A DNA stretch of 64,000 nt from Podarcis vaucheri (taxonomy: Eukaryota), in NCBI GenBank assembly GCA_965113315.1, contig OZ220365.1; one strand, written 5' to 3'. A program made the translations under genes and the position numbers. This document shows positions 2,910 through 60,147 of this stretch, in pieces. A model generated the notes under the pieces. That model worked only from the letters and a program-made list of their open reading frames with translations. It was not told where the DNA came from and made no database searches. The stretch's first letter is position 1, and each line of letters begins with the position of its first letter.

Positions 2910-3554
2910 CAGCGGTACCTTGGTTCTCAAATGCCTTGGTTCCCAAACACCGAAAACCCAAAGTGCGTGTTCCGGTTTTCAAACGTTTTCCAGAAGCCGA
3001 ACATCTGATGCAGCTGTTGGCTATTGTTTCCACTGCGCCTGCACCAATCAGAAGCTGTGCCTTGGTTTTCGAACATTTTGGAAGTCAAATGGACTTCTGG
3101 AACGGATTAAGTTTGGAGATTTTGTTTTTGCTATTTATTTTGCGTTTTTGTTTTTGAAGCTTTTTCGGTTAATTTGTTTTTGTGACTGTGTGGAACCCAC
3201 TTCAGCTACTGATTGATTGTGTGATTGCAGAAATGGATAAAAGTCCCCCATCCAAACAATGAATATCATCAGTGCAGGTAAGGGAAAAAAATAATTTTAA
3301 TTTTTATCATCTACACTACTGTCTTATTTTATAGTACAGTACATTGATTATTGCTTTCATTTTATGGATCAATGGTCTCATTAGATAGTAAAATTCATGT
3401 TAAATTGCTGTTTTAGGGGTTGTTTTTAAAAGTCTGGAACGGATTAATCTGTTTTGCGTTACTTTCTATGGGAAAGTGTGCCTTGGTTTTAGAACGCTTT
3501 GGTTTTGGAACGGACTTCCGGAACGGATTAAGTTTGAGAACCAAGGTACCACTG
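2910..3554. mobile_element. Tigger/mariner-like non-autonomous DNA transposon, about 645 bp
   Basis: TA|CAGCGGTACCTTGGTTCTCAAA...TTTGAGAACCAAGGTACCACTG. Confidence 0.85.
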
Positions 3555-4323
3555 CATCATTAATCCAGAGTTTTGTCTAATTATTGACTATATAGGCATA
3601 AGACTGTAAATGCAAGGAAGAAAGATTTATTATTTCTTTTCACTGCATTTGAGCAGGATGGGGGGCACAAGTGAACCAGAACTCAAAACAACAGGTTTCT
3701 AAAAACGTTTCTGGGCACAATAGTTTGTTTGTTTTTTTACTATAATTTTGATGTGAAGTTTTTGTAAAACACCAGTTTTTCAGGGACATGCAATTTTTTT
3801 TGTGTGCCCTAGGCTCCTTGGGGAGAAAGGGTGGAATGTAAATTCAACAAATAAAGCAGGGAATCGCACAAAATTGATTTTGTTATTAAGTTGCACAGTA
3901 CAATAACATGCTATAAATTACATGCCAACTTTACACAATTCATGTGATAGTTTCGGAACTTTCAATGAGATAAGACGTCAAAAATGAACACCATAAAAAG
4001 GCATGCCTTATATGTCCTACAAAGGTGCAAAAAAATGCTCTTTGCCAAGCGGCTGGCTTGGGACATCCAGTATACAGAATGCAGAGAGGAAGCTTATTAA
4101 TCTTTCTAAGCCTTTGGAGAACCAGGAAGGTGTGTTTGTAAGGTGGGGAAAATGCATTGTGAGCATATTCAAATTCATGCTCTGCATTTTAGTAGTAACA
4201 CTTTAAAAAAAAAAAAGCAGTGCCAGATGGACAAATTTGCATCTCTTTTGTTGTTTAATTTGTATGCTATTTCCAAACTGATGAAACCATTTGCTATTAG
4301 CAAAGAACTGCCAACATGTATAC

Positions 4324-10387: not shown

Positions 10388-10899
10388 TTTTACACCGCTT
10401 CTCAAACCAGCCTAGGTCAGAGCACAGGGAACCTTTGGTCATCCAGGTGTTGTTAAACTCCATTCCCATCAGCACCAACCAGCACAGCCAACAGTTTGAA
10501 ATGCTGCAAGTTCAGACTCCAGAAACATCTGGAGCGCCAAAAGCTCAGCAGCCCTAGGTAGAAGTCCTTTAGTACTTGGACGACATGAGATACCCAACCC
10601 GCAAGTCTGCCAAGGAGTGATACATGCTTCTCTGCCATGTCACTGCAAATCTCAGACTTGGGGGAATCTGGCTATGCTCAGTAAGGAGTGGAATCTACAC
10701 TCTGTACATGTCTAAATGAAATCTCTCACTGCAACACATGTTCCACCGAAAACTACTTCTAGAGAGGAATTCTTCAAACCCCTGCCTTGAATAAACAAAT
10801 ATGCTTTTTTTAAAAGGAAAAAAAATCCTTCCTCTGCTTTATATTCTTTCCCCTGCAAATCTCTTTTCCCCAGAGGCTACCCTCCCTCGACACCATCAC

Positions 10900-11790
10900 A
10901 AGGGGGCGTAACACTGGACGCCAAGCAGACAGATCCCCGCAGCGCAGGCCCGGATCCGACAACAAACCGTGCTCCTGAGCGTGTGCAGAGAGTCCTTTCG
11001 CTCGGGGCAGGATCTCACCTCGTCGCCGAAGTGCACCACCTTCTGGCCGGTGTTGAGGCGCAGGTTCGGGTAGCAGACCGGCGGCGGGGGTCCCCGGGTG
11101 ACCCCTCGGTGCGCCGCGTAGCGGGCCTGGATGTGGGGCTCCACCAGGGTCTGGTCGATGATCTCGTCCTGCTGGCGGGGCGGCAGGCGCTCCCACTCGG
11201 GCCCGTAGCGCTCGCGGATGCGCTCCTTCTCCGCCATGATCTTGCGCGCCATGGGGTTGAGCGACGAGAAGTAGCTGAAGCGCTTGCGCTCCCGCTCATC
11301 CAGCGGCCGGTTGCCGTTCAGGGCCGCCGTGCGGGAAGCGGCGATCGCCGCCGCCATCGAAGCCATCGCCGCCGCCCCCCGGGGCCCTGGCGCGCGCTCG
11401 GACGCCGGCGTGGAGCGCAGCCGAGCCGGGAGCACAAAACAAGTCGGTCGTCCACCGCCGCCGCGCCCTCCTTCTCCTCGGCTCCGCGCACAGCTCCGCT
11501 TTCCGCCTCCCGGAAGCCTTTGGCTCCGCCCCTGCTCTTAGGACCGCCTCCCGGGCGTCCTCCCCTTAAAAACAAACACACAAAAGACACACACACACAA
11601 GCACACGAGCCCGGGACAGGGCATCGATGCTGCTGCCAACGCGGGGCGCGTGGGTGTTGTGCCGCGTAAAGAGCCAGGAACCCTTTCCAAAGCAGCGCGC
11701 TTTGCCATCCACAGCACAAAATTACGCGTAGCAAACGTATACGGGGGGCGGTGCTCAAATCAGACGAACTAAGCGAGTGTAGTGGACGGA
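10900..11790. promoter_or_regulatory. CpG island / promoter of C1orf198
   Basis: GC- and CpG-rich block over exon 1; GC boxes (GGCTCCGCCC ~11522, GGGGCGG ~11745) and ETS-like CCGGAAG ~11510. Confidence 0.8.
11019..11366 (-). CDS. C1orf198: C1orf198 homolog, coding exon 1 (116 codons); later exons not found in window
   Basis: [58 protein letters not shown]...[10 protein letters not shown] matches the recalled vertebrate C1orf198 N-terminus; ATG at 11366, GAG|gtgag donor after 11019; synteny with TTC13-ARV1. Confidence 0.92.
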
Positions 11791-27200: not shown

Positions 27201-30200
27201 AGCTTTCATTGCTTTCTTCCACCTACAATAATGGGCTAACCTCAAGAGTTAGAGGAAATTAACTTGGAGATCAGAATCAAACTAATTCCTAAGGGATGTG
27301 GGGCAGTGGTGGTGGGAACCTGGGCAACCAATGTGGACTTGGGGGGGGCACCTCACCATAACACAGCACCAATAATGAAACCCATGGCCAGCAGCACTGC
27401 CTGGGAATGCACCCCAAATGCTGACCTGGAAGCCCTCTTACAGTTGCAAAAACATAAGCATAGGAGGAGGATTGGGGCCCGACTGCAACACGTCTGCATT
27501 CAGAAGACAGCTGGCAACACTGCCAAGGAAGAGAATGGGAAGGACAGAGAGAATGGAGAATCACTGAGCCTTTACATCTTACAAAACTGGTTAGCTCTTC
27601 AGGAAATCAAGGTTATCTTGGTGATGTTCTGTACAACTATTGCTATAACCAAATCTGAAATGTTAAGAGGAATGAAATAATGGACTTAACTTTATTTACT
27701 TTAGTTTGCAAGGAGAAAGAACTTTTGTTCCTTGATCTAAGAAGTTGGATTAAAGATTCAAGTTATGCATCGCCCTATATGATACACAATGGGCATACTA
27801 CTATGAAATGTAAAATTGGAATTTGCATAAGGGGTGAAGTAGGGGGAGGAAAGCATTGTGAAAGAGAGAAAAGAAAAACCCAACATGCCTGGGTCAAGCA
27901 GTATAGGAAGGTCCAAACACTATGATTTGCCCTGTGGCCTCCAGCCTCCAGGGATGGCCCTTATTAGAAGAATTAAACAGGTTTTGTGAAGTAGTCACAC
28001 AGACAGGGCTATAAATCATGTAATCAACAGCAGAAGTAATGATGTAGGAACCACAAAAATCTATAAATACTTCCTCAGTTCACTTTGCCTCTGCCTTTAT
28101 AAAGTCAATACTTGCTTAGCCTACAGTTTAGTACTCTTGATAATAATAATTCACAAACTAGATTTCTTTCTTTATTACCTTCGCCATTTCACAGCAATGT
28201 CAAACATATCTCTCCACTGCATCAGCCTGGTTTTTCCATTAATTCGTACTTTCGAGTTCACCCACGTTCTCTGTACAGCTTGCATTACTTCTATCACAGC
28301 TAGCCCCATTGCTGAACAACAAACAGAAGTAGGTTACCAGTGAAGCCCACTCACATTTATACTTGACATCTAAACGTGAGGCAGAAGCTGAAGCATCAAA
28401 ATAGTGCAATTCTATGCATGCCCTTGAGGGACGCGAGTGGCTATATGGGTGAAACCACATAGCCTAGGACTTGCCGATCAGAAGGTCGGCGGCTCGAATC
28501 CCCGCGACAGGGTGAGCTCCTGTTGCTCGGTCCCTGCTCCTGCCAACCTAGCAGTTCAAAAGCACTTCAAAGTGCAGGTAGATAAATAGGTACCGCTCCA
28601 GCAAGAAGGTAAACGGCATTTCCGGGTGCTGCTCTGGTTCGCCAGAAGCGGCTTAGTCACATGACCCGGAAGCTGTACGCCGGTTCCCTCAGCCAATAAA
28701 GTGAGATGAGCGCTGCAACCCCAGAGTCGGTCATGACTGGACCTAATGGTCAGGGGCCCCTTTACCTTTACCTTATGCATGCCCTTACTATGTTCAGTAA
28801 GGCTTACTCTCTAAGTAAGTGAGCATAGAATTGCAGTCTAAGAGATGCAAGTGGATGACTGCATAGGATCTAATATTTAATATCACTGGAGGTTGCTGCC
28901 TCATTAAGTATTCACACTTTACAGTACATAATGGACTGTAATAGTAGTTTTCTTTTATGTATGAATAAGCTGAACTACCATATGAATAGAGCATGTTTTA
29001 TTGCTGACTATCCAATGCTAATCACAGCAAGCGCCATTATACTTTTAATTCCATATTTCAATAAAGTTTTTCCAGTGTACCTCTATGTACTCTCTTGTTT
29101 GGAAGAAATCCAGGGGTCTCATATTGCATTAGGGAACCCAACTGATCAGCAACACATATAATCTCTTGCATTTCGGGTTTATAGTTTTCAAATTTCTGAA
29201 GTAGTACATCCCTTAAAATCACAAATAAAGCCAGGATTAAATATCAAGATGATTTCTTACATAGATTCTATATTAGTAGCAGCCCGTGAGATAGACAAAC
29301 ATTAGAAATATGGTTTAAGATTACCAACCCCTGCCAAGGTTTATTGCAACTTTCCTTTTTATAACTCTATTTGGGCATAAATAAATAAATAAAATTGTCC
29401 ACTAGCACCTTAGAGACCAAATAAGTTTGTTCTGGATATAAGCTTTTGTGTGCATGCACACTTCTTCAGATACACTGAAACAGAAGTCACTAGACCCTTA
29501 TATATAGTGGGAGGGTGGGGTGGGTTTTTTCTCATAAGGGTAGTAGGAGATGGGTGATTGACCCAATGGATATGGTAAACCTGTTGACTGTTAACGACTG
29601 CAATTAGTCCTACAGGAAAACTACTGTGCTATTTCTTTTCTGATTGAGTCTTACTTACTTTGCCAAACCTTTATTAGGCATTGCAAATATAGGCCATCAT
29701 AAAACATCCATATATATATTTATATATACAAATAAACAGGCATGTAAAATATTTAATAACGAGGATTTTTGGTGGAGTTTCTTTCCACTCTAAGAGATAC
29801 TACTGACAAAAACTCAGCCACCCTGGCAGTTACTTCTGGGTTAATGTCAGACCAATAGAATATGATATTTTCATTGTGCCATGATGTTAGACTACCCCAA
29901 AAAAAGAGGATAGCAAGCATTTACATAGCGGTTGTACAATGGACAGTAGAAAATAATACCTTCTACAGTGTCCAGCAAATTCGAAAAACATCCGCAATGT
30001 CTATCATTTCTGGAGATGTTTAAATATCTGCCCTTGATGAAAGCTGAGGGGAAAATATTCAGTCGGGGTAACATAAAGGCTCTGTGTTGGACTGGAATTA
30101 TTAATTTTGTAATATAAGTGACCCTGTTATCTGTTGTATTTAAACCATAGAAGTCATGGGATCTGATGGAGTTCAACAAACATATTGAAAGGTCAAGGAC

Positions 30201-36200: not shown

Positions 36201-39200
36201 CAGACAGATTCTGTAAGGCTATCTTGTTGCAAGAGATCGGGCAAGAGAATAGGCGATCTCCCCCTGCCTCCCAAACTCAGTTCTCTTTAAAGGAGATAGA
36301 TAGAATAGCTTGTAGCTTATAATACATTGCAAATATGACCCTTGAGACTAAGCACCTATCCCAGCTCATTCTCTGCAGGTGCTCAACTGAAAACTAACCT
36401 CAGATATGAAGTAAAGAGTACCTCTGTGTCGGTAAAGTCGTGCGGAGGGTTTTAGCTGAATAGCTTTAGTGAGGTCAGCCAGCGCTTCACTCATTTGACC
36501 CAGAGGAGACAGTATCTGTAAAACCAAGATAATACTTTGAGCAAGATTGTACAAATAATCCTTCATTTTCAAAATGATTTTAGGTAGCAATATGTAATAA
36601 CTATGCACAAAAAATTAATTTTGCGTTGAGTAATTAAACAAGTGCATTATTTACATAAAAAAGTTGTACATTAAAATTGGAGATTGGAGCACATGCATAT
36701 ATTACATTACATCTATTTAACTTTAAAAAGCAGACTAAGTCCTATTAATTTTGTCAGGTATTAAAGGGCTGAAGGAGAAAAAGTGGGTTTGGGTTTTACT
36801 GAAATGACGTATTTCTTCCTACTAAATTTTTTCTAAGCCCATCTGTATAGCTTAAAAGAAAATTGTTGCATTTATTATTACAAGCATCCTTCTATACATT
36901 AACAAAGAAAATGAAGAGTTAATGACATTCACGGACCCTCTGAAGGCTGACAGCTACAAACACTAGTGTAATTATGCTTTTCAATAGAAATAAAATACCG
37001 GTCAACAATAGAAAGTGTCCTTTCATACTGCATCACGGTGTGGTACGCTGGTTTGACATCATCTGATAGGAAGCGCCTACAGAGCATGGTGAATACAGCA
37101 CAAGATATTATGGGCTGTCCCGTGAATCCGCTGGATGAAATAGCGGAAGAACGTTGCCTCAGGAGAGTGAGTAGCTTTGGTATTTTTATTCTATTTTATT
37201 TTTGTCTTAATGTATTGATAGCTGTATATTGATTAACATCAAATCTTAATTCATATATTATTAGGAATATGACCAAGAACTTTCAACAATAAACATATAG
37301 AAACATACAGAAAATAACTGGATAAACAAAATAACAATAAGGTATAGATAAGGTATAGACATCAGAAAATCTTTTAAAAGTGGAAGAAATACCTCTGCTC
37401 GCTGCTCAAACACTTCAGCTTGATCTGGGACCAGACTAATGACTCTGCTCAGCTCAAACAAAGCTAGCTCTGCATTTTTTATATCCTTAAAAATGGGGGG
37501 GGGGGAAATATGTAAGTAACAATGTATGCTTAGTCATAGGGAGGTTATGGTGACAATTTTTAAATGGTACAACACTCAGTGAATCAAAATTCTTGGTTTC
37601 ATCATGGAATATTTTGATGTGTGATAAGAGTCACATACATGCAACATCAGAACAAACAAGGCTAAGTATTCCAGTTACTATGGGACCATCGTGAATCTGC
37701 TATTGCCAGGGCTGGCCTGCCCATGAAGCACCATGAGGCAACTGCCTCAGATGGTAGAAGGGAAATAAAAATCTTTATATTTTATCGTTATTGTAGTTGC
37801 AAAAATAATATGTATCCTAAAAAGCAATCGGAAGTGAAGGGACTGTACAAATAACTTCTGGGTTTGGAATAAGTACATTCCTCTTGAGCAAAAATCATTG
37901 GCTAGAGCAGGGGTTGTCAACCTGGTCCCTACCACCCACTAGTGGGCGTTACAGGATTCTAGGTGGGCAGTAGGGGGTTCTACGGCACAAGCTGAATCCT
38001 CCTTCCATCAAGCACTGGTGGGTGGTAAGGAAATTTTAACATCAATAAAGATACATTAGTGGGCGGTAGGTATAAAAAGGTTGACTACCCGCGGCTAGAG
38101 TGCCATGACCACTGCCGGGGGAACTGCTTCCCTGGAAGTGGAGAGTATGGAGTCATGGAGTTGAATAGAAGGAAACGTCACACAACTGATGTTGTCCACT
38201 AAAAATGTGCAGATTGACAGCAGTGTCTGATCCCAACAATCCTGAAGGAAAAGAGAATCCTTCACACGGCTGTCTAGAACCAACCAATACCAACCCCCGC
38301 CTCATTATTGCAAATCTTCTGTCTTAGGCAAAGTTGCAATTCTAACCGCTTACTGTAAGAAACAAATAGAGGCCCCAGGTTCAGGAGCAGTCTATTCTCT
38401 GAGTACCAGGTGAGGTGACTTTTTTTTGTTCACCTCAAGCACCAAAATGCCTTAGGCCAGCCCTGGTGAATGCATATATATTATGAAATTCATTATCATG
38501 TGCGGCTTTAAAAATTCCTTCCAGTAGCACCTTAAAGACCAACTAAGTTAGTTCTTGGTATGAGCTTTCGTGTGCATGCACACTTCTTCAGATGAAGTGT
38601 GCATGCACACGAAAGCTCATACCAAGAACTAACTTAGTTGGTCTTTAAGGTGCTACTGGAAGGAATTTCTTTATTTTGGCTTTAAAAATGTTATACTCAC
38701 ATGCAGCCCTTTCTTTCCATATGCTATCCCTCGTCCATAAATTGCACTAACAAGCTCTGGTTGCTCCTATTTGAAGCAAAATAAAATAATCTTTAGAAGG
38801 TTCCACTTGTCCTAATAGTGAATGCTACATTCCATCATACATAACCAAAGCCAAAATTCATGCATTTCATCCACATTCATTTGCATTTCTAAGGAGTTCC
38901 TTTGGGCTTCTGCATACAATTAAAGAGCAGCTTGGTGGGCAGTTTTACACAGAAGATGCTTAAAAGGGGAAACTACTATAGGAGTGGAGTGTGTGTGCTC
39001 CTTTAGTCTTTGCACTGTCTCTGTAAACTCCTTATTAACCTCTGCAGTTTTATTACTTTAAAAACCATTGCTCATTTCAGACCTCTTCTTTGCTATACTG
39101 TAGTTGCAAATCTCATTTCATATTCATATATTAAATAATACATTCTGGTACATTCTGGTACATTTCCCACTGCCACTAAAATCAGCTTTAGGTGGCTGTG

Positions 39201-56887: not shown

Positions 56888-58844
56888 GATGCTTTGTGGG
56901 CTTCATTTGTAAATCTCTTAATGTTGATGTTTATGTAAGAGGCATATTTAAAGTTCTTTTTGAAAAGATTTAAGCAGTGATCCTATACCCACTTACCTGA
57001 GAGTAATGTGATGGAACTTAATTCTGAGTAAGTGCATAAAGAATTGTACTGTTCTTATGTTTCCCTGAAAATGAACTTGACAGCGTTATTACACATGTTT
57101 ACTCAAAAGTAAGCTCTACCTGGGTACATATGAGTGGCGCCTATGTATGATTTAAGTGTGTTTGGAATGTACAGTAAAACTTCATTCTGTGGACGATAGC
57201 ATATTTAATTAGGGCAATGGTAACAGGAGGTAGCTGGAATAGATAATTGTCTCCCAAAATTAATTGTACTTAACTGCCGCATTGGGAAACAATAGCTTGT
57301 ACTTGGAAAGTTATATGCTATTAATTTTTTTCTACCCCAAACCAAGTGGGTTAAGAAGGATGACTTCTGGAGCTCCCCACCCAATGGCTTTGCAGTTCTC
57401 TTCCATGGAATTGTGTTCGTAGAAGCTGAGGCATCTGTTTTATTTATACTTAATTATAAGGTTCAAACAAGAAGGTGGTCTAGGTGAATTTTGGTGTTCA
57501 GTGAGAAGCCCTCTGATATATTTGATAAACTTTGCAGTGAACTCGATGACTCAGAACTAGTAGAGGTATTAGGAATCTGTGTTGATGTTTAATATCCTTA
57601 CTTACCCTTGTTTTTTGGGTAACATTTCTGTACTGCCTTTCATTTCAAAGAATATTTTATTTTGAGAATTTATATGTCACTTGTCATTTCTATGATAAAC
57701 TATCAAGTAGTTACATATAAAAGGTAAAATAATAAAATTCAATTATTAAAACCAAATCAGAAAGCAGAAGGAAAAAAAGGAAAGCCAATACCTGGTCAGA
57801 GGCAGGTTCATCCCATAAGTTTTGCCCCATTGCAGTGTTCTTCTCAAGTGCAGCACTCCCAGCTCTACACTTCTATGAGTCTATGATCTTCTCGCATAGA
57901 CAAGAATGTCAGCTGTTCTCTATTATGCTTAAAGGCAACAAGTAGGCTAAAGACTAAATGTTCCTGGTGGTCCCTGTATCTAGAGTGGCACAGGAATCCT
58001 CTTTTTACCACTGAACTTAAGGGAATTTTTCTGTAGACAGGATATCCACAGCCCATATGACAATCATTTGTGCCCATGCCATTATTTTGTTTTTATTTTT
58101 TATTTAATAACATTTATATTCCACTTGATTGTAAAAAAGAGTGATTTACAAAAAGAATAAAATAATGAAATGTTCACTTTAAAATAGCTAAATGCAACTA
58201 TTTTAAAATGTCAAAAATATTTTTAAACCAATGATAAACTGCCACTTCTAGCCTGTGCCAACAAAATGCATCTTCCCAGCCTCCCATCTGTTGTTCCTCA
58301 GCAGCTTTGAGGACAGAACTCAGTCAGCCCCACGCTGGGCTGGAAACTTTCCATGGCCTACATCTTTGAGAGAACAAAACAGAATATATAAAACAATACA
58401 CAGCACTACTTCTTTTAAAGAAATTAAATAACACAGTGATGACAACAAAGCCGTATAAAAGCAAACAGTAAAAGATCACAACCAGTCATCTCTCTCCTCG
58501 GCGCATAACTGTAAAAGCTTTTGCTGGGATCTAAGAAACAGTTGGTATCCTTCAAGGGACTTGTGATGACCCTGTATAATCTTTAACCTTCAGATATGCT
58601 AACCTGACCTGATGTGCTGTTCAAACTGCTTTTGAAGCTTTGTTCAGTTTCAAAAGCTGTTTCTCAGTGATATGGAGGTGAGCAGGTTTGCTGTTTAAGT
58701 GGGAGGGGGAGTTGAAAGCCCCCATCTTGAAAAATCCCCTCTAAGTAGATGTCAGGAAGAAGGTTATAATCTAGCCACTACGGCTGGGCAATATAAGCTT
58801 TTCAACAATATCGCCAGCCAAACATCAGTTTGTCGATATACCAC

Positions 58845-58914
58845 CCAGTAGCACCTTAAAGACCAACTAAGTTAGTTCTTGGTATGAGCTTTCGTGTGCA
58901 TGCACACTTCTTCA
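58845..58914 (-). mobile_element. 70-bp Penelope-like terminal-repeat insertion with 10-bp TSD
   Basis: GATATACCAC at 58835-58844 and 58915-58924; insert identical to 38521-38590. Confidence 0.8.
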
Positions 58915-58918
58915 GATA
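58880..58918 (-). ncRNA. Minimal type I hammerhead ribozyme motif, intact core
   Basis: - strand UAU-CUGAAGA-A-GUGUG(CAUG)CACAC-GAAA-GC-UC|AUACCA; conserved CUGANGA and GAAA boxes, NUH = CUC. Confidence 0.72.
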
Positions 58919-60147
58919 TACCACGGCACTGAAAAAGCAAGCTGCATTTCAGCTTCTTGAAAGGGTAGCTTTTAGTACCATACCAGAAGCTCCAAGTGTA
59001 AGTGTATTAATCTTACATTCTTTAATATATCCTAACATGTCATTTTAATTACCAATCTCGCAAAGTTTCACTGGATTAATTTAAAATATTCAGCTTGATT
59101 CCCATTAAGTACATTTTAAATCAGAAGTGACTAGGCTGAATGAATTTGAACAAAAAGAGCCATAGACGGAGTTAAAAATATATATTTCTCCTCTTGGAAT
59201 CTTGATACAGCCATTCTGGCTCTGCCGGATTCTAAATGATTCAAAAGGCTCTTGTGTTTAACCAGTCGAAACAGTTTAAGCAATAGCTGGCACAATTCAG
59301 ACAGGCATAATTATTGTTTGTGACAGAGCCTAGCTCCGGAAGTCTAAAATGAACCCATGAATTACTGCACATGGGCCAGTCCTCTCAACTCCACTGAATG
59401 GTTTCTTTGACCCTTGAGGGGTAGCACTATGTGCTTGAACACTGGGCTGATGAGATAAATAAACATTTTTTTGAGGTGAGGGAGGGATCCTGCCCAAAAT
59501 AAAACCTCACAGACTTAAGAGCAGACATGCTATATACAAACAAGAGGTCATAACACAATAAAACATGCATTATTAAATCTTGAAATTTTGACTTTGCAAA
59601 AAGGGACAAGATAGCATTTAGTGTCAAAACACTTTCTCCTTCCAAAATGTTTGCCGAGTGCAATGAAACTTACATCCAAATAAGGGGAAGTGCAGTGAAA
59701 TACTATGCATGACTGCTGAGAAATAATCCTGCTGAGTTTATAAGGATTTACTCCCAAGTATAGGAATTCAGCCTTAGTACATTAATTTGTACTATAGTTA
59801 ACACTGGCCTGTTTTGCATGAAACTCTAAACCAGGAGTGGGGAACCTGTGGGCCTCCTGATGTTGCTGAACTATCAGCCCCAAGCAGCATGACCAACGGT
59901 AGGCAGTGATGAGAGCTGCAGTCCACTAACATCTGGTGGCCTTGCAGAAGAAAATGGGGCCTTCCAGGGCTGTTAGGTCCTTGGGACTCTCCCCAAGCCA
60001 CACCCCTCAACAGCCCTGCTTTGTACCTCCAGTATTTTTCCTGCCTGGGATGTGTCCTTGAACTCTGATGCTTCTTGCTGTCTTAGATTGAAGATTGAGA
60101 TGGATGTGTATAGAAACTAGCCTACTATAAAGGTAAAATTCACATGC

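What the first reader, a model, noticed from the sequence alone, without database searches (positions are those of the whole stretch)
58835..58924. A 70-nt mobile insertion that is little more than a minimal hammerhead ribozyme
Seen: 70 bp (58845-58914) flanked by a 10-bp direct repeat GATATACCAC. The - strand reads CUGAAGA (58915-58909), an extra A, palindromic helix II GUGUGCAUGCACAC, GAAA (58893-58890), then GCUC|AUACCA. Helix III is only AGCU with no loop, so it cannot close in a monomer but is self-complementary. The insert is identical over 73 nt to a copy 20 kb away, so the family is young. Established: Penelope-like retroelements carry such minimal type I hammerheads, which cleave as dimers. 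Inference: this is either an extremely truncated Penelope insertion or a tiny non-autonomous retrozyme-like unit mobilised in trans. The target site supplies the 5' strand of helix I (3 bp in register, or UGGUAU/AUACCA 6 bp with a 2-nt offset).
Basis: partly seen in the sequence, partly recalled or inferred. Interest (0 to 1): 0.8.

Follow-up and report, generated by a model that had tools for sequence, protein, structure and literature searches.

The report
Tiny Penelope retroelement stub with hammerhead
This is a real, recent insertion of about 74 bases: the end piece of a very abundant lizard Penelope-type retrotransposon, carrying that class's usual minimal hammerhead ribozyme motif; it is almost certainly an inert, dead-on-arrival copy, and so an ordinary example of a known kind.

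Summary
A 70-nt block (58845-58914) sits between two copies of GATATACCAC. Its minus strand carries every box of a minimal type I hammerhead. A related species has the precise empty site.

The boundary needs correcting. The family consensus and the copy 20 kb away both continue through GATA (sense UAUC). The insert is therefore best read as 74 nt (58845-58918) with a 6-bp duplication plus 4 nt of microhomology. On that reading the target does not supply helix I.

The module is hugely repeated in three related lizards and is transcribed. Most copies carry a 3' tail (AAGGAA plus a T-run) that this copy lacks.

Its anatomy matches published Penelope-like elements:
- a min-HHR just downstream of a pLTR;
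- internal reverse-transcription start sites;
- an optional tail, heavy 5' truncation, and fold-back and tandem forms.

I read it as a dead-on-arrival stub made by a Penelope RT/endonuclease, not as a self-propagating 70-nt retrozyme. No reads end at the predicted cleavage site.

The one mildly new point is that many independent copies share a 5' end at -4/-5. This could mark an RNA 5' end about 30 nt downstream of a TATA-like box, but that is unproven.

No RT/GIY-YIG ORF could be linked with these tools. The scan already holds 118 notes on this element class in the same genome.

The parts
58835..58844 (+). Left copy of the 10-bp direct repeat GATATACCAC. The certain target-site duplication is TACCAC, 58839-58844.
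   Evidence: The empty site in species C holds one copy, with 10 letters fitting either side.
58845..58918 (-). Inserted Penelope-type module, 74 nt by family consensus. The sense strand reads UAUC-UGAAGAAG...GGUGCUACUGG.
   Evidence: 73-nt identity to 38521-38593; the family matches through 58918, and the insert is absent in species C.
58915..58924 (+). Right copy of the direct repeat. Its first 4 nt, GATA (sense UAUC), coincide with the element's own sequence.
58909..58915 (-). Hammerhead core box C3-A9, CUGAAGA. The C at 58915 lies in the repeat.
   Evidence: The min-HHR descriptor is in PMC4209133.
58908..58908 (-). Unpaired A between core position 9 and 10.1, a hallmark of Penelope min-HHRs.
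   Evidence: PMC4209133.
58894..58907 (-). Helix II palindrome GUGUGCAUGCACAC. It is predicted as 5 bp plus a CAUG loop, with a G10.1-C11.1 closing pair.
   Evidence: RNAfold.
58886..58893 (-). GAAA plus GCUC. This comprises core G12-A14, the palindromic AGCU (15.1-16.1) with no loop, and C17. The predicted cut lies between 58886 and 58885.
   Evidence: No RNA ends at this site.
58880..58885 (-). 3' strand of helix I, AUACCA. In the family it pairs with GUAU at -5..-2 (4 bp). Here only UAU/AUA (3 bp) pair in register.
58859..58881 (-). Predicted stem-loop AAGAACUAAC-UUA-GUUGGUCUU between the ribozyme and the 3' end. It has no covariation support.
   Evidence: The common family variants at 58859, 58874 and 58878 do not preserve the pairs.
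58845..58851 (-). 3' end CUACUGG, the point where cDNA synthesis began in this copy. Most other copies continue AAGGAA plus a T-run (the 'tail').
   Evidence: loose ends at 58845: 46-47 contigs per species, 456 RNA reads.
38504..38689 (.). Sister insertion, a head-to-head fold-back of two modules. The arms are 38521-38593 (minus) and about 38594-38659 (plus), with tails AAGGA and AAGGAATTTCTTTATTTT. It lies between 12-bp duplications GGCUUUAAAAAU (38504-15 and 38678-89).
29399..29514 (-). Older copy, 88.6% identical, with core G12 mutated to A. It continues upstream into pLTR-like sequence with a TATA-like box (TATATATAA at -38..-30 from UGAAGA) and has a (TTTA)n-like tail.

Best explanation
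This is a dead-on-arrival retrocopy made by the reverse transcriptase/GIY-YIG endonuclease of a Penelope-like element (PLE).

Proposed mechanism:
1. A longer master RNA has the layout pLTR - minimal hammerhead - stem-loop - CUACUGG - AAGGAA - U-run - further sequence.
2. That RNA was bound by the element's protein.
3. The target was nicked after ...GATATACCAC on the plus strand.
4. cDNA synthesis began inside the RNA, directly at ...CUACUGG.
5. Synthesis ran about 74 nt to a preferred 5' end at UAUC, 4-5 nt upstream of the ribozyme core.
6. There it joined the other target end through 4 nt of microhomology, leaving a staggered-cut duplication of 6-10 bp.

The copy keeps the catalytic boxes of the hammerhead. 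However, it has no helix III partner, only 3 bp of helix I, and no sequence downstream of the RT start site. It should therefore neither cleave nor transpose again.

Shown: the insertion, the duplication, the empty allele, the family's abundance, the tail and the upstream continuation, and the fold-back and tandem relatives.
Inferred by analogy with PAc and other PLEs: the enzyme, internal initiation, and inertness.
For: A precise empty site exists in a related species, and the junction is present in the source reads.

Three 100%-identical modules lie in one 64-kb window, plus one 88.6% copy.

The module's summed contig depth is 1.6-4.0 million, against 10-30 in the flanks, in three species. 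3,300-4,100 contigs were laid per run.

All descriptor-independent traits of metazoan PLE min-HHRs are present (against PMC4209133):
- the extra nucleotide after A9;
- the G10.1-C11.1 pair;
- a long helix II;
- a palindromic 15.2-16.2;
- a 4-bp helix I in the family.

The four common family variants (58859, 58874, 58878, 58886) all lie outside the core and helix II. The one at C17 is C>U, which a hammerhead tolerates.

The architecture parallels PAc of Anolis (PMC11167929):
- a hammerhead at the end of a pLTR;
- RT start sites a few tens of nt downstream, at several positions. Here the tail is 0, 5-9 or 18 nt long.
- both DNA ends extended, which would yield head-to-head insertions such as 38504-38689.

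PLE hallmarks listed in PMC8557442 are all seen: heavy 5' truncation, partial tandems, an inverted truncated copy, and an optional tail.
Against: - No RT/GIY-YIG ORF is in the window, and none could be fetched for this family.
- The module's own reading frame stops after 18 codons, unlike PAc, where the ORF starts in the hammerhead. The master may therefore itself be non-autonomous.
- The first-strand nick site (CAC^GG) is not the ATT motif preferred by PAc.
- The requirement for RNA downstream of the RT start is known only for PAc in vitro.
Confidence: 0.75

Rival explanations
1. The short copies are full-length run-off cDNAs of a discrete short RNA, not random truncations.
- Transcription would start at G(-5), just upstream of the hammerhead and about 30 nt downstream of a TATA-like box in the pLTR.
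- The RT would initiate internally at CUACUGG or in the tail and run to the capped 5' end.
- This would give a defined class of about 74 nt plus tail.

This refines the main explanation rather than replacing it.
For: The old copy has TATATAAG at -36..-29, which predicts a start at about -6/-5, a T-G (pyrimidine-purine) step.

PAc has a TATA-like run 45 nt upstream of its hammerhead, followed about 32 nt later by CCATACC (my reading).

DNA loose ends peak at 58918 (-4) in 68, 71 and 49 contigs. Agreement beyond that point is only 0.38-0.39, so the flanks mostly differ. No internal 5' truncation point appears among the listed DNA rows.

Five joints run from 58918 into other module pieces. The next letter is C or CC, which is G or GG in the sense strand. 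This would fit G(-5) plus a cap-derived extra G (table 5c).

The 5' ends of the finding's copy (-4 to +1) and of the left fold-back arm (-3) fall in the same few nucleotides.

Penelope's TSS is known to lie in the pLTR (PMC8557442).
Against: - Among RNA reads, 401 of those crossing the boundary run on upstream into pLTR sequence for a median of 63 nt, past the TATA-like box.
- No position shows a pile-up of read starts.
- The expressed consensus reads TAGAAGG where the old copy has TATAAGG.
- All copies longer than -4 are also clipped at 58918 by this reference, so the size of the -4 class is estimated only indirectly.
- AT-rich microhomology (TAT) with AT-rich targets could produce the same preferred junction.
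- The two fold-back arms may not be independent events.
Confidence: 0.3
2. It is a tiny non-autonomous retrozyme-like element. In this model a unit of about 74-90 nt is transcribed from tandem copies, cut by dimeric hammerheads, perhaps circularised, and then reverse-transcribed in trans by a PLE enzyme. The solitary copy would be its monomeric offspring.
For: - A tandem junction exists: 58918 to 58845 with 8 letters between, at depth 69.
- Non-LTR retrozymes are proposed to be PLE pLTR derivatives, with consensus lengths down to 51 bp and many monomers (bioRxiv 10.64898/2026.07.22.740005).
- The hammerhead core is intact in the young copies.
Against: - Copy ends are not permuted around the cleavage site. 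They sit at an RT-start side and at -4.
- No RNA reads begin or end at C17|A1.1. The 14 reads ending at 58885 carry an adapter and are off by one.
- RNA reads mostly continue into long flanking element sequence on both sides, with agreement 0.71-0.75.
- The 3' end is variable.
- Min-HHRs cleave poorly even as dimers (PMC4209133), and PAc's needs its protein (PMC11167929).
- An earlier follow-up in this genome found no unit-length or circular RNA for a 174-nt tandem (s1-853164; not retested here).
Confidence: 0.12
3. It is a random 5' truncation of an ordinary long PLE copy, with no preferred end. On this view the shared end points in this window are coincidence, or follow from snap-back in the fold-back copy.
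For: - 5' truncation is the rule in PLEs (PMC8557442; PMC4209133).
- Only two clearly independent young events lie in the window.
- Other notes of this scan report 5' ends at other positions, for example at the cleavage site (s1-850205, s1-856299).
Against: The spike of distinct contigs ending at 58917-58919 in all three species. No internal truncation point is listed for DNA, although rows with as few as 2-5 contigs are listed.
Confidence: 0.2

Closest known systems
Minimal hammerhead ribozymes (min-HHR) of metazoan Penelope-like elements (Cervera & De la Pena 2014, PMC4209133)
   Same: - Type I topology, with CUGANGA and GAAA boxes.
- One unpaired nucleotide before helix II.
- A G10.1-C11.1 pair and a long helix II.
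- A 4-nt palindrome in place of helix III, so pairing is only possible as a dimer.
- A short helix I.
- Mostly solitary genomic copies, attributed to truncated PLEs.
- Pairs on opposite strands 100-700 bp apart.
   Different: - The helix II sequence is specific to this family and was found in no paper.
- Helix I is cut to 3 bp in this copy.
- Abundance appears far higher than the thousands reported for frog or coelacanth. This rests on a rough estimate from summed depth only.
PAc / Poseidon_Ac of Anolis carolinensis (Frangieh et al. 2024, PMC11167929)
   Same: - A hammerhead at the pLTR end, with a TATA-like run upstream.
- Insertions that end 3' at internal RT start sites, with an optional tail.
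- Extension of both target strands, which explains fold-backs.
- No RNA-seq reads at the cleavage site.
   Different: - The sequence is unrelated apart from the core.
- In PAc the ORF starts inside the hammerhead. Here the frame closes after 18 codons.
- PAc's RT starts lie at about +85 and +119 in an AC-rich stem-loop. Here they lie about 70-90 nt from the core, next to AAGGAA and a U-run.
- The first nick here is not at ATT.
Animal non-LTR retrozymes (Cervera & De la Pena 2020, PMC7229834; Li et al. 2026 preprint)
   Same: - Type I hammerhead units derived from PLE pLTRs.
- Short consensus lengths (51-972 bp).
- Monomeric offspring scattered in the genome.
   Different: Retrozymes are defined by tandem copies that yield self-cleaved circular RNAs. 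This is a solitary unit with target-site duplication, its ends are unrelated to the cleavage site, and there is no sign of cleaved or circular RNA.

Membership tests
PLE minimal hammerhead (min-HHR) | Conserved core boxes C3-U-G-A-N-G-A9 and G12-A-A14, with H17 at the cut site | tested here: met
   CUGAAGA at 58915-58909, GAA at 58893-58891 and C17 at 58886. The older copy has G12>A.
PLE minimal hammerhead (min-HHR) | Unpaired nucleotide between 9 and 10.1, a G10.1-C11.1 pair, and an extended helix II | tested here: met
   A at 58908. GUGUG/CACAC is predicted as 5 bp plus a tetraloop, starting G...C. Criteria come from PMC4209133.
PLE minimal hammerhead (min-HHR) | No closed helix III; palindromic 15.1-16.1 allowing a dimer | tested here: met
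   AGCU at 58890-58887. The cofold minimum, however, pairs the two helix II palindromes with each other rather than helix III.
PLE minimal hammerhead (min-HHR) | Helix I of 4-5 bp | tested here: inconclusive
   The family has GUAU/AUAC (4 bp). This copy keeps only UAU/AUA in register, followed by an A-C mismatch.
PLE minimal hammerhead (min-HHR) | Self-cleavage | not testable with these tools
   No RNA ends at 58886/58885 in one RNA-seq run. This is weak negative evidence, as was found for PAc.
Rfam hammerhead families | Score at or above the gathering threshold of a Hammerhead covariance model | tested here: not met
   No hit at gathering thresholds over the whole window. No hammerhead hit at E<=10 in 58600-59150.
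Penelope-like element insertion | Target-site duplication and a precise empty site | tested here: met
   A 10-bp repeat (6-10 bp true TSD). A contig of species C skips exactly 80 nt.
Penelope-like element insertion | 5' truncation, an optional 3' tail, and partial tandem and inverted arrangements among copies | tested here: met
   Tail AAGGAA plus T-run in most copies. There are tandem and opposite-strand joints and a fold-back at 38504-38689. Criteria come from PMC8557442.
Penelope-like element insertion | Family linked to an ORF with a telomerase-like RT and a GIY-YIG endonuclease | not testable with these tools
   No such ORF in the window. No eukaryotic genome search is available. Collection scans and the protein word search were blank.
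Penelope-like element insertion | AT-rich or microsatellite target preference | tested here: inconclusive
   The fold-back target is 68-71% AT. The finding's target is 53-57% AT, against a window mean of 60%. Loose-end flanks are AT-rich.
Non-LTR retrozyme | Tandem hammerhead units giving unit-length self-cleaved or circular RNA | tested here: not met
   This is a solitary unit, and the nearest copy is 20 kb away. No cleavage-site ends were seen, and RNA reads continue into long flanking element sequence.

The most novel reading that the evidence does not exclude
The shared 5' end at -4/-5 may mark the capped transcription start of the pLTR promoter. On that reading the 74-nt stubs are complete run-off copies of the shortest template a Penelope RT can use, from TSS to internal RT start. 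The stubs would then be a genome-wide fossil record mapping both the promoter start and the RT initiation sites of a vertebrate PLE. They would also place the hammerhead at the extreme 5' end of the element's RNA, where cleavage would remove the cap together with the ribozyme core.
Probability: 0.3. Interest if true: 0.4.

Novelty: new member of a known kind. Interest (0 to 1): 0.2.

Why it matters
In itself it matters little. It is one of perhaps 10^5 copies of a known class of retroelement debris, probably inert, lying in what appears to be an intron.

Its modest value is as a clean, dated example. The insert is present in one species and the empty site survives in a close relative. It shows how short a Penelope-mediated insertion can be and where its two ends fall.

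If the preferred 5' end proves to be an RNA 5' end, the many such stubs would give a free in vivo map of the start of the template RNA and of the RT initiation sites for a vertebrate PLE. That would complement the single in vitro study of PAc.

Tried and rejected
- **Rfam, whole window at gathering thresholds and locally at E<=10.** No hammerhead hit. This is uninformative for a motif with no helix III.
- **PLE ORF search.** I looked upstream of the older copy and among all ORFs of 130 aa or more. The only hit was a DUF4706 exon-like ORF.
- **Exact-pattern scans of metagenome and prokaryote genome collections for the 30-mer core.** Nothing was found, as expected for lizard DNA.
- **Word search with the 41-aa ORF that spans the older copy, hoping to fetch further loci.** No candidate.
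- **Full-text search for four diagnostic strings of the module.** One irrelevant paper.
- **Search of earlier notes by sequence and by several word sets.** Mostly blank.
- **Target-site duplication for the older copy.** None of 8 nt or more.
- **Homology-guided insertion.** I considered whether the insertion was guided by similarity between the flank (58927-58941) and the pLTR. That similarity occurs in about 5% of random window segments, so I rejected it as evidence.
- **Reads ending at 58885.** I considered that these 14 RNA reads mark ribozyme cleavage. I rejected this because they end one base past the site, on the wrong side for either product, and they carry a transposase adapter.
- **Alignment to PAc.** The PAc consensus was compared by eye only.
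Full report
**Observation.**
The plus strand reads GATATACCAC (58835-58844), then 70 nt, then GATATACCAC (58915-58924).
- C-UGAAGA (58915-58909);
- an extra A (58908);
- the 14-nt palindrome GUGUGCAUGCACAC (58907-58894);
- GAAA (58893-58890);
- GCUC (58889-58886);
- AUACCA (58885-58880).

The 34-nt ribozyme half and the 33-nt 3' half each recur in the window, with no matches expected by chance in 100 shuffles. BLASTN finds four copies:
- the finding;
- an identical one at 38521-38590 (minus);
- its inverted twin at 38591-38659 (plus);
- an 88.6% copy at 29399-29468 (minus).

The window contains no N.

**Is it an insertion?**
I laid contigs of three related lizards and RNA reads of one of them on 58745-59014 (runs, result).
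- A 926-nt contig of species C joins 58834 directly to 58915. It skips 80 nt, 10 letters fit either side, and 34 letters lie on its shorter side. This is a precise empty site holding one copy of the repeat.
- In the source species a 1,736-nt contig crosses the right junction (58894-59014). The insert is therefore in the reads and is not an assembly artefact.
- Species I gave no bridging contig, so its state is unknown.
- The insertion is younger than the split between species A and C. By shared 31-mers (share 0.68), that split corresponds to roughly 1% divergence.

**Where are the boundaries?**
Identity between the finding and the 38.5-kb copy runs 58845-58917 = 38521-38593, which is 73 nt.

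In one search the reads and contigs from other copies keep matching through 58918 (plus-strand GATA, sense UAUC). The RNA reads then continue CACTGAAACAGAAGTTGCCAGATCC... with agreement 0.75. In the sense strand this is ...CUUCUGUUUCAGUG|UAUC|UGAAGAAG, the same sequence that precedes the older copy.

So UAUC belongs to the element. The insert is best read as 74 nt (58845-58918), with a 6-bp duplication TACCAC and 4 nt of junctional microhomology. A 10-bp duplication with a 70-nt insert cannot be excluded from this locus alone.

It follows that the target does not 'supply' helix I. The family's own helix I is GUAU/AUAC (4 bp), and this copy keeps three of those pairs.

**What family is it?**
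The motif has every trait that Cervera and De la Pena list as emerging independently of their search descriptor for metazoan Penelope min-HHRs (PMC4209133):
- a G10.1-C11.1 pair;
- a long helix II;
- a palindromic 15.2-16.2;
- a short helix I.

That paper also states that most such motifs are solitary and probably belong to truncated PLEs, and that pairs on opposite strands occur.

Craig et al. (PMC8557442) list the structural hallmarks of PLE insertions: heavy 5' truncation, partial tandems, an adjacent inverted truncated copy, and an optional tail. All are seen here.
- Most copies continue beyond CUACUGG into AAGGAA plus a T-run. This holds for 46-47 contigs per species and 456 RNA reads.
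- The fold-back at 38504-38689 has tails of 5-9 and 18 nt and a 12-bp duplication.
- One search lists a tandem junction (58918 to 58845 with 8 letters between) and opposite-strand junctions.

The one PLE studied biochemically is PAc of Anolis (PMC11167929).
- It has its hammerhead at the pLTR end.
- It starts reverse transcription at several internal sites some tens of nucleotides downstream. This creates the tail.
- It extends both target strands.
- It requires RNA beyond the RT start sites.
- It shows no RNA-seq reads at the cleavage site.

The sequence here is unrelated to PAc outside the core, and its reading frame closes after 18 codons. It is therefore a different family, and perhaps one whose master is itself non-autonomous.

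**Abundance and expression.**
Summed contig depth over the module is 1.6-4.0 million, against 10-30 in the flanks, in all three species. 3,300-4,100 contigs were laid per run. The tool warns that this is not a copy number. I take it only as 'very abundant, perhaps of order 10^5'.

The four variants above 10% share (58859, 58874, 58878, 58886) avoid the core and helix II. The one at C17 is C>U, which a hammerhead tolerates.

RNA reads (771 in 12% of one run) cover the module in both mate orientations about equally. They mostly continue into consistent element sequence on both sides. What is transcribed is thus mainly long copies, not free 74-nt units.

No position shows a pile-up of molecule ends. 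The 14 reads ending at 58885 carry a transposase adapter and lie one base past the predicted cut, so there is no evidence of self-cleavage.

**The 5' end.**
This is the only point where the finding goes slightly beyond the ordinary.
- In each DNA run the best-supported loose ends on the 5' side are at 58917-58919, with 49-71 contigs at 58918.
- Beyond 58918 their agreement is only 0.38-0.39. The pLTR signal fades after 7-16 letters into AT-rich, mutually unlike sequence with a median of 255 nt.
- By contrast, no internal 5' truncation point within the module is listed for DNA, although rows with as few as 2-5 contigs are shown.
- Many independent loci therefore end at -4/-5.
- The finding (-4 to +1) and the left fold-back arm (-3) fall in the same few nucleotides.

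Two explanations are open. The first is run-off at a real RNA 5' end. The older copy has TATATAAG at -36..-29, which predicts a start near G(-5). Five junctions in table 5c show G or GG before UAUC, as a cap-derived extra G would give. The second is preferential microhomology joining at the UAU patch with AT-rich targets.

Against the first, most RNA reads crossing the boundary continue upstream past the TATA-like box. In addition, the reference itself clips every longer copy at 58918, so the size of the class is inferred and not counted. I put the run-off model at about 0.3.

**Function.**
The solitary copy has no partner for helix III within 20 kb, and its helix I is shortened. By analogy with PAc, it lacks the RNA needed downstream of the RT start. 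That would put this ribozyme antisense to the host transcript, but I did not verify it. I conclude that the copy is inert.

**What could not be done.**
No tool here searches a eukaryotic genome. Blank results carry no weight.

The scan already holds 118 notes on hammerhead/Penelope features in this same genome. Several were judged ordinary by their follow-ups. I did not use them as evidence.

**Verdict.**
The insertion is real and well described. It is a new member of a known kind: a Penelope-like element terminal stub with a min-HHR. The retrozyme-like reading is unlikely. Interest is low, apart from the preferred 5' end.

Noticed in passing
window 38504-38689: Head-to-head fold-back of two modules with a 12-bp duplication GGCTTTAAAAAT. 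The left arm starts at -3, and the right arm starts at about +5 (or carries a U at core position 7). The tails are 5-9 and 18 nt long. This is the structure expected if both target ends prime cDNA, as shown for PAc in vitro.
   Followed up: partly
window 29399-29514 (minus): Older module copy with core G12 mutated to A. It has about 40 nt or more of pLTR-like upstream sequence, including TATATATAA at -38..-30 and a pyrimidine tract plus CAG (a splice-acceptor-like UUUCAG) ending at -7. It also has a (TTTA)n-like tail. No TSD was found.
   Followed up: partly
window 58927-58941: The flank 8 nt beyond the insert (sense CTTGCTTTTTCAGTG) resembles the element's own pLTR segment next to the hammerhead (CTTCTGTTTCAGTG). 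It is present in the empty allele, so it is target sequence. Similarity this strong occurs in about 5% of random window segments, so it is probably chance.
   Followed up: yes
window 58885 (RNA run X24): 14 RNA reads end at 58885 with a transposase adapter. This is one base past the predicted cleavage site. They may be copies of one fragment and are not consistent with either cleavage product.
   Followed up: partly
window 58925-58940: Contigs of species C and I break or lose depth here, just right of the insertion site and next to an A-run. This suggests an indel or other difference between species.
   Followed up: no
window 10899-11435 (minus): An ORF with a strong DUF4706 match (E 3.7e-25). 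It is probably an exon of a FAM89-like gene. From memory, FAM89A neighbours TTC13 in human.
   Followed up: no
loose ends at 58845 in RNA: Expressed long copies continue CUACUGG-AAGGAA-U13-AUUAUGGCAGA. This gives a handle for finding the master element downstream of the RT start sites.
   Followed up: no
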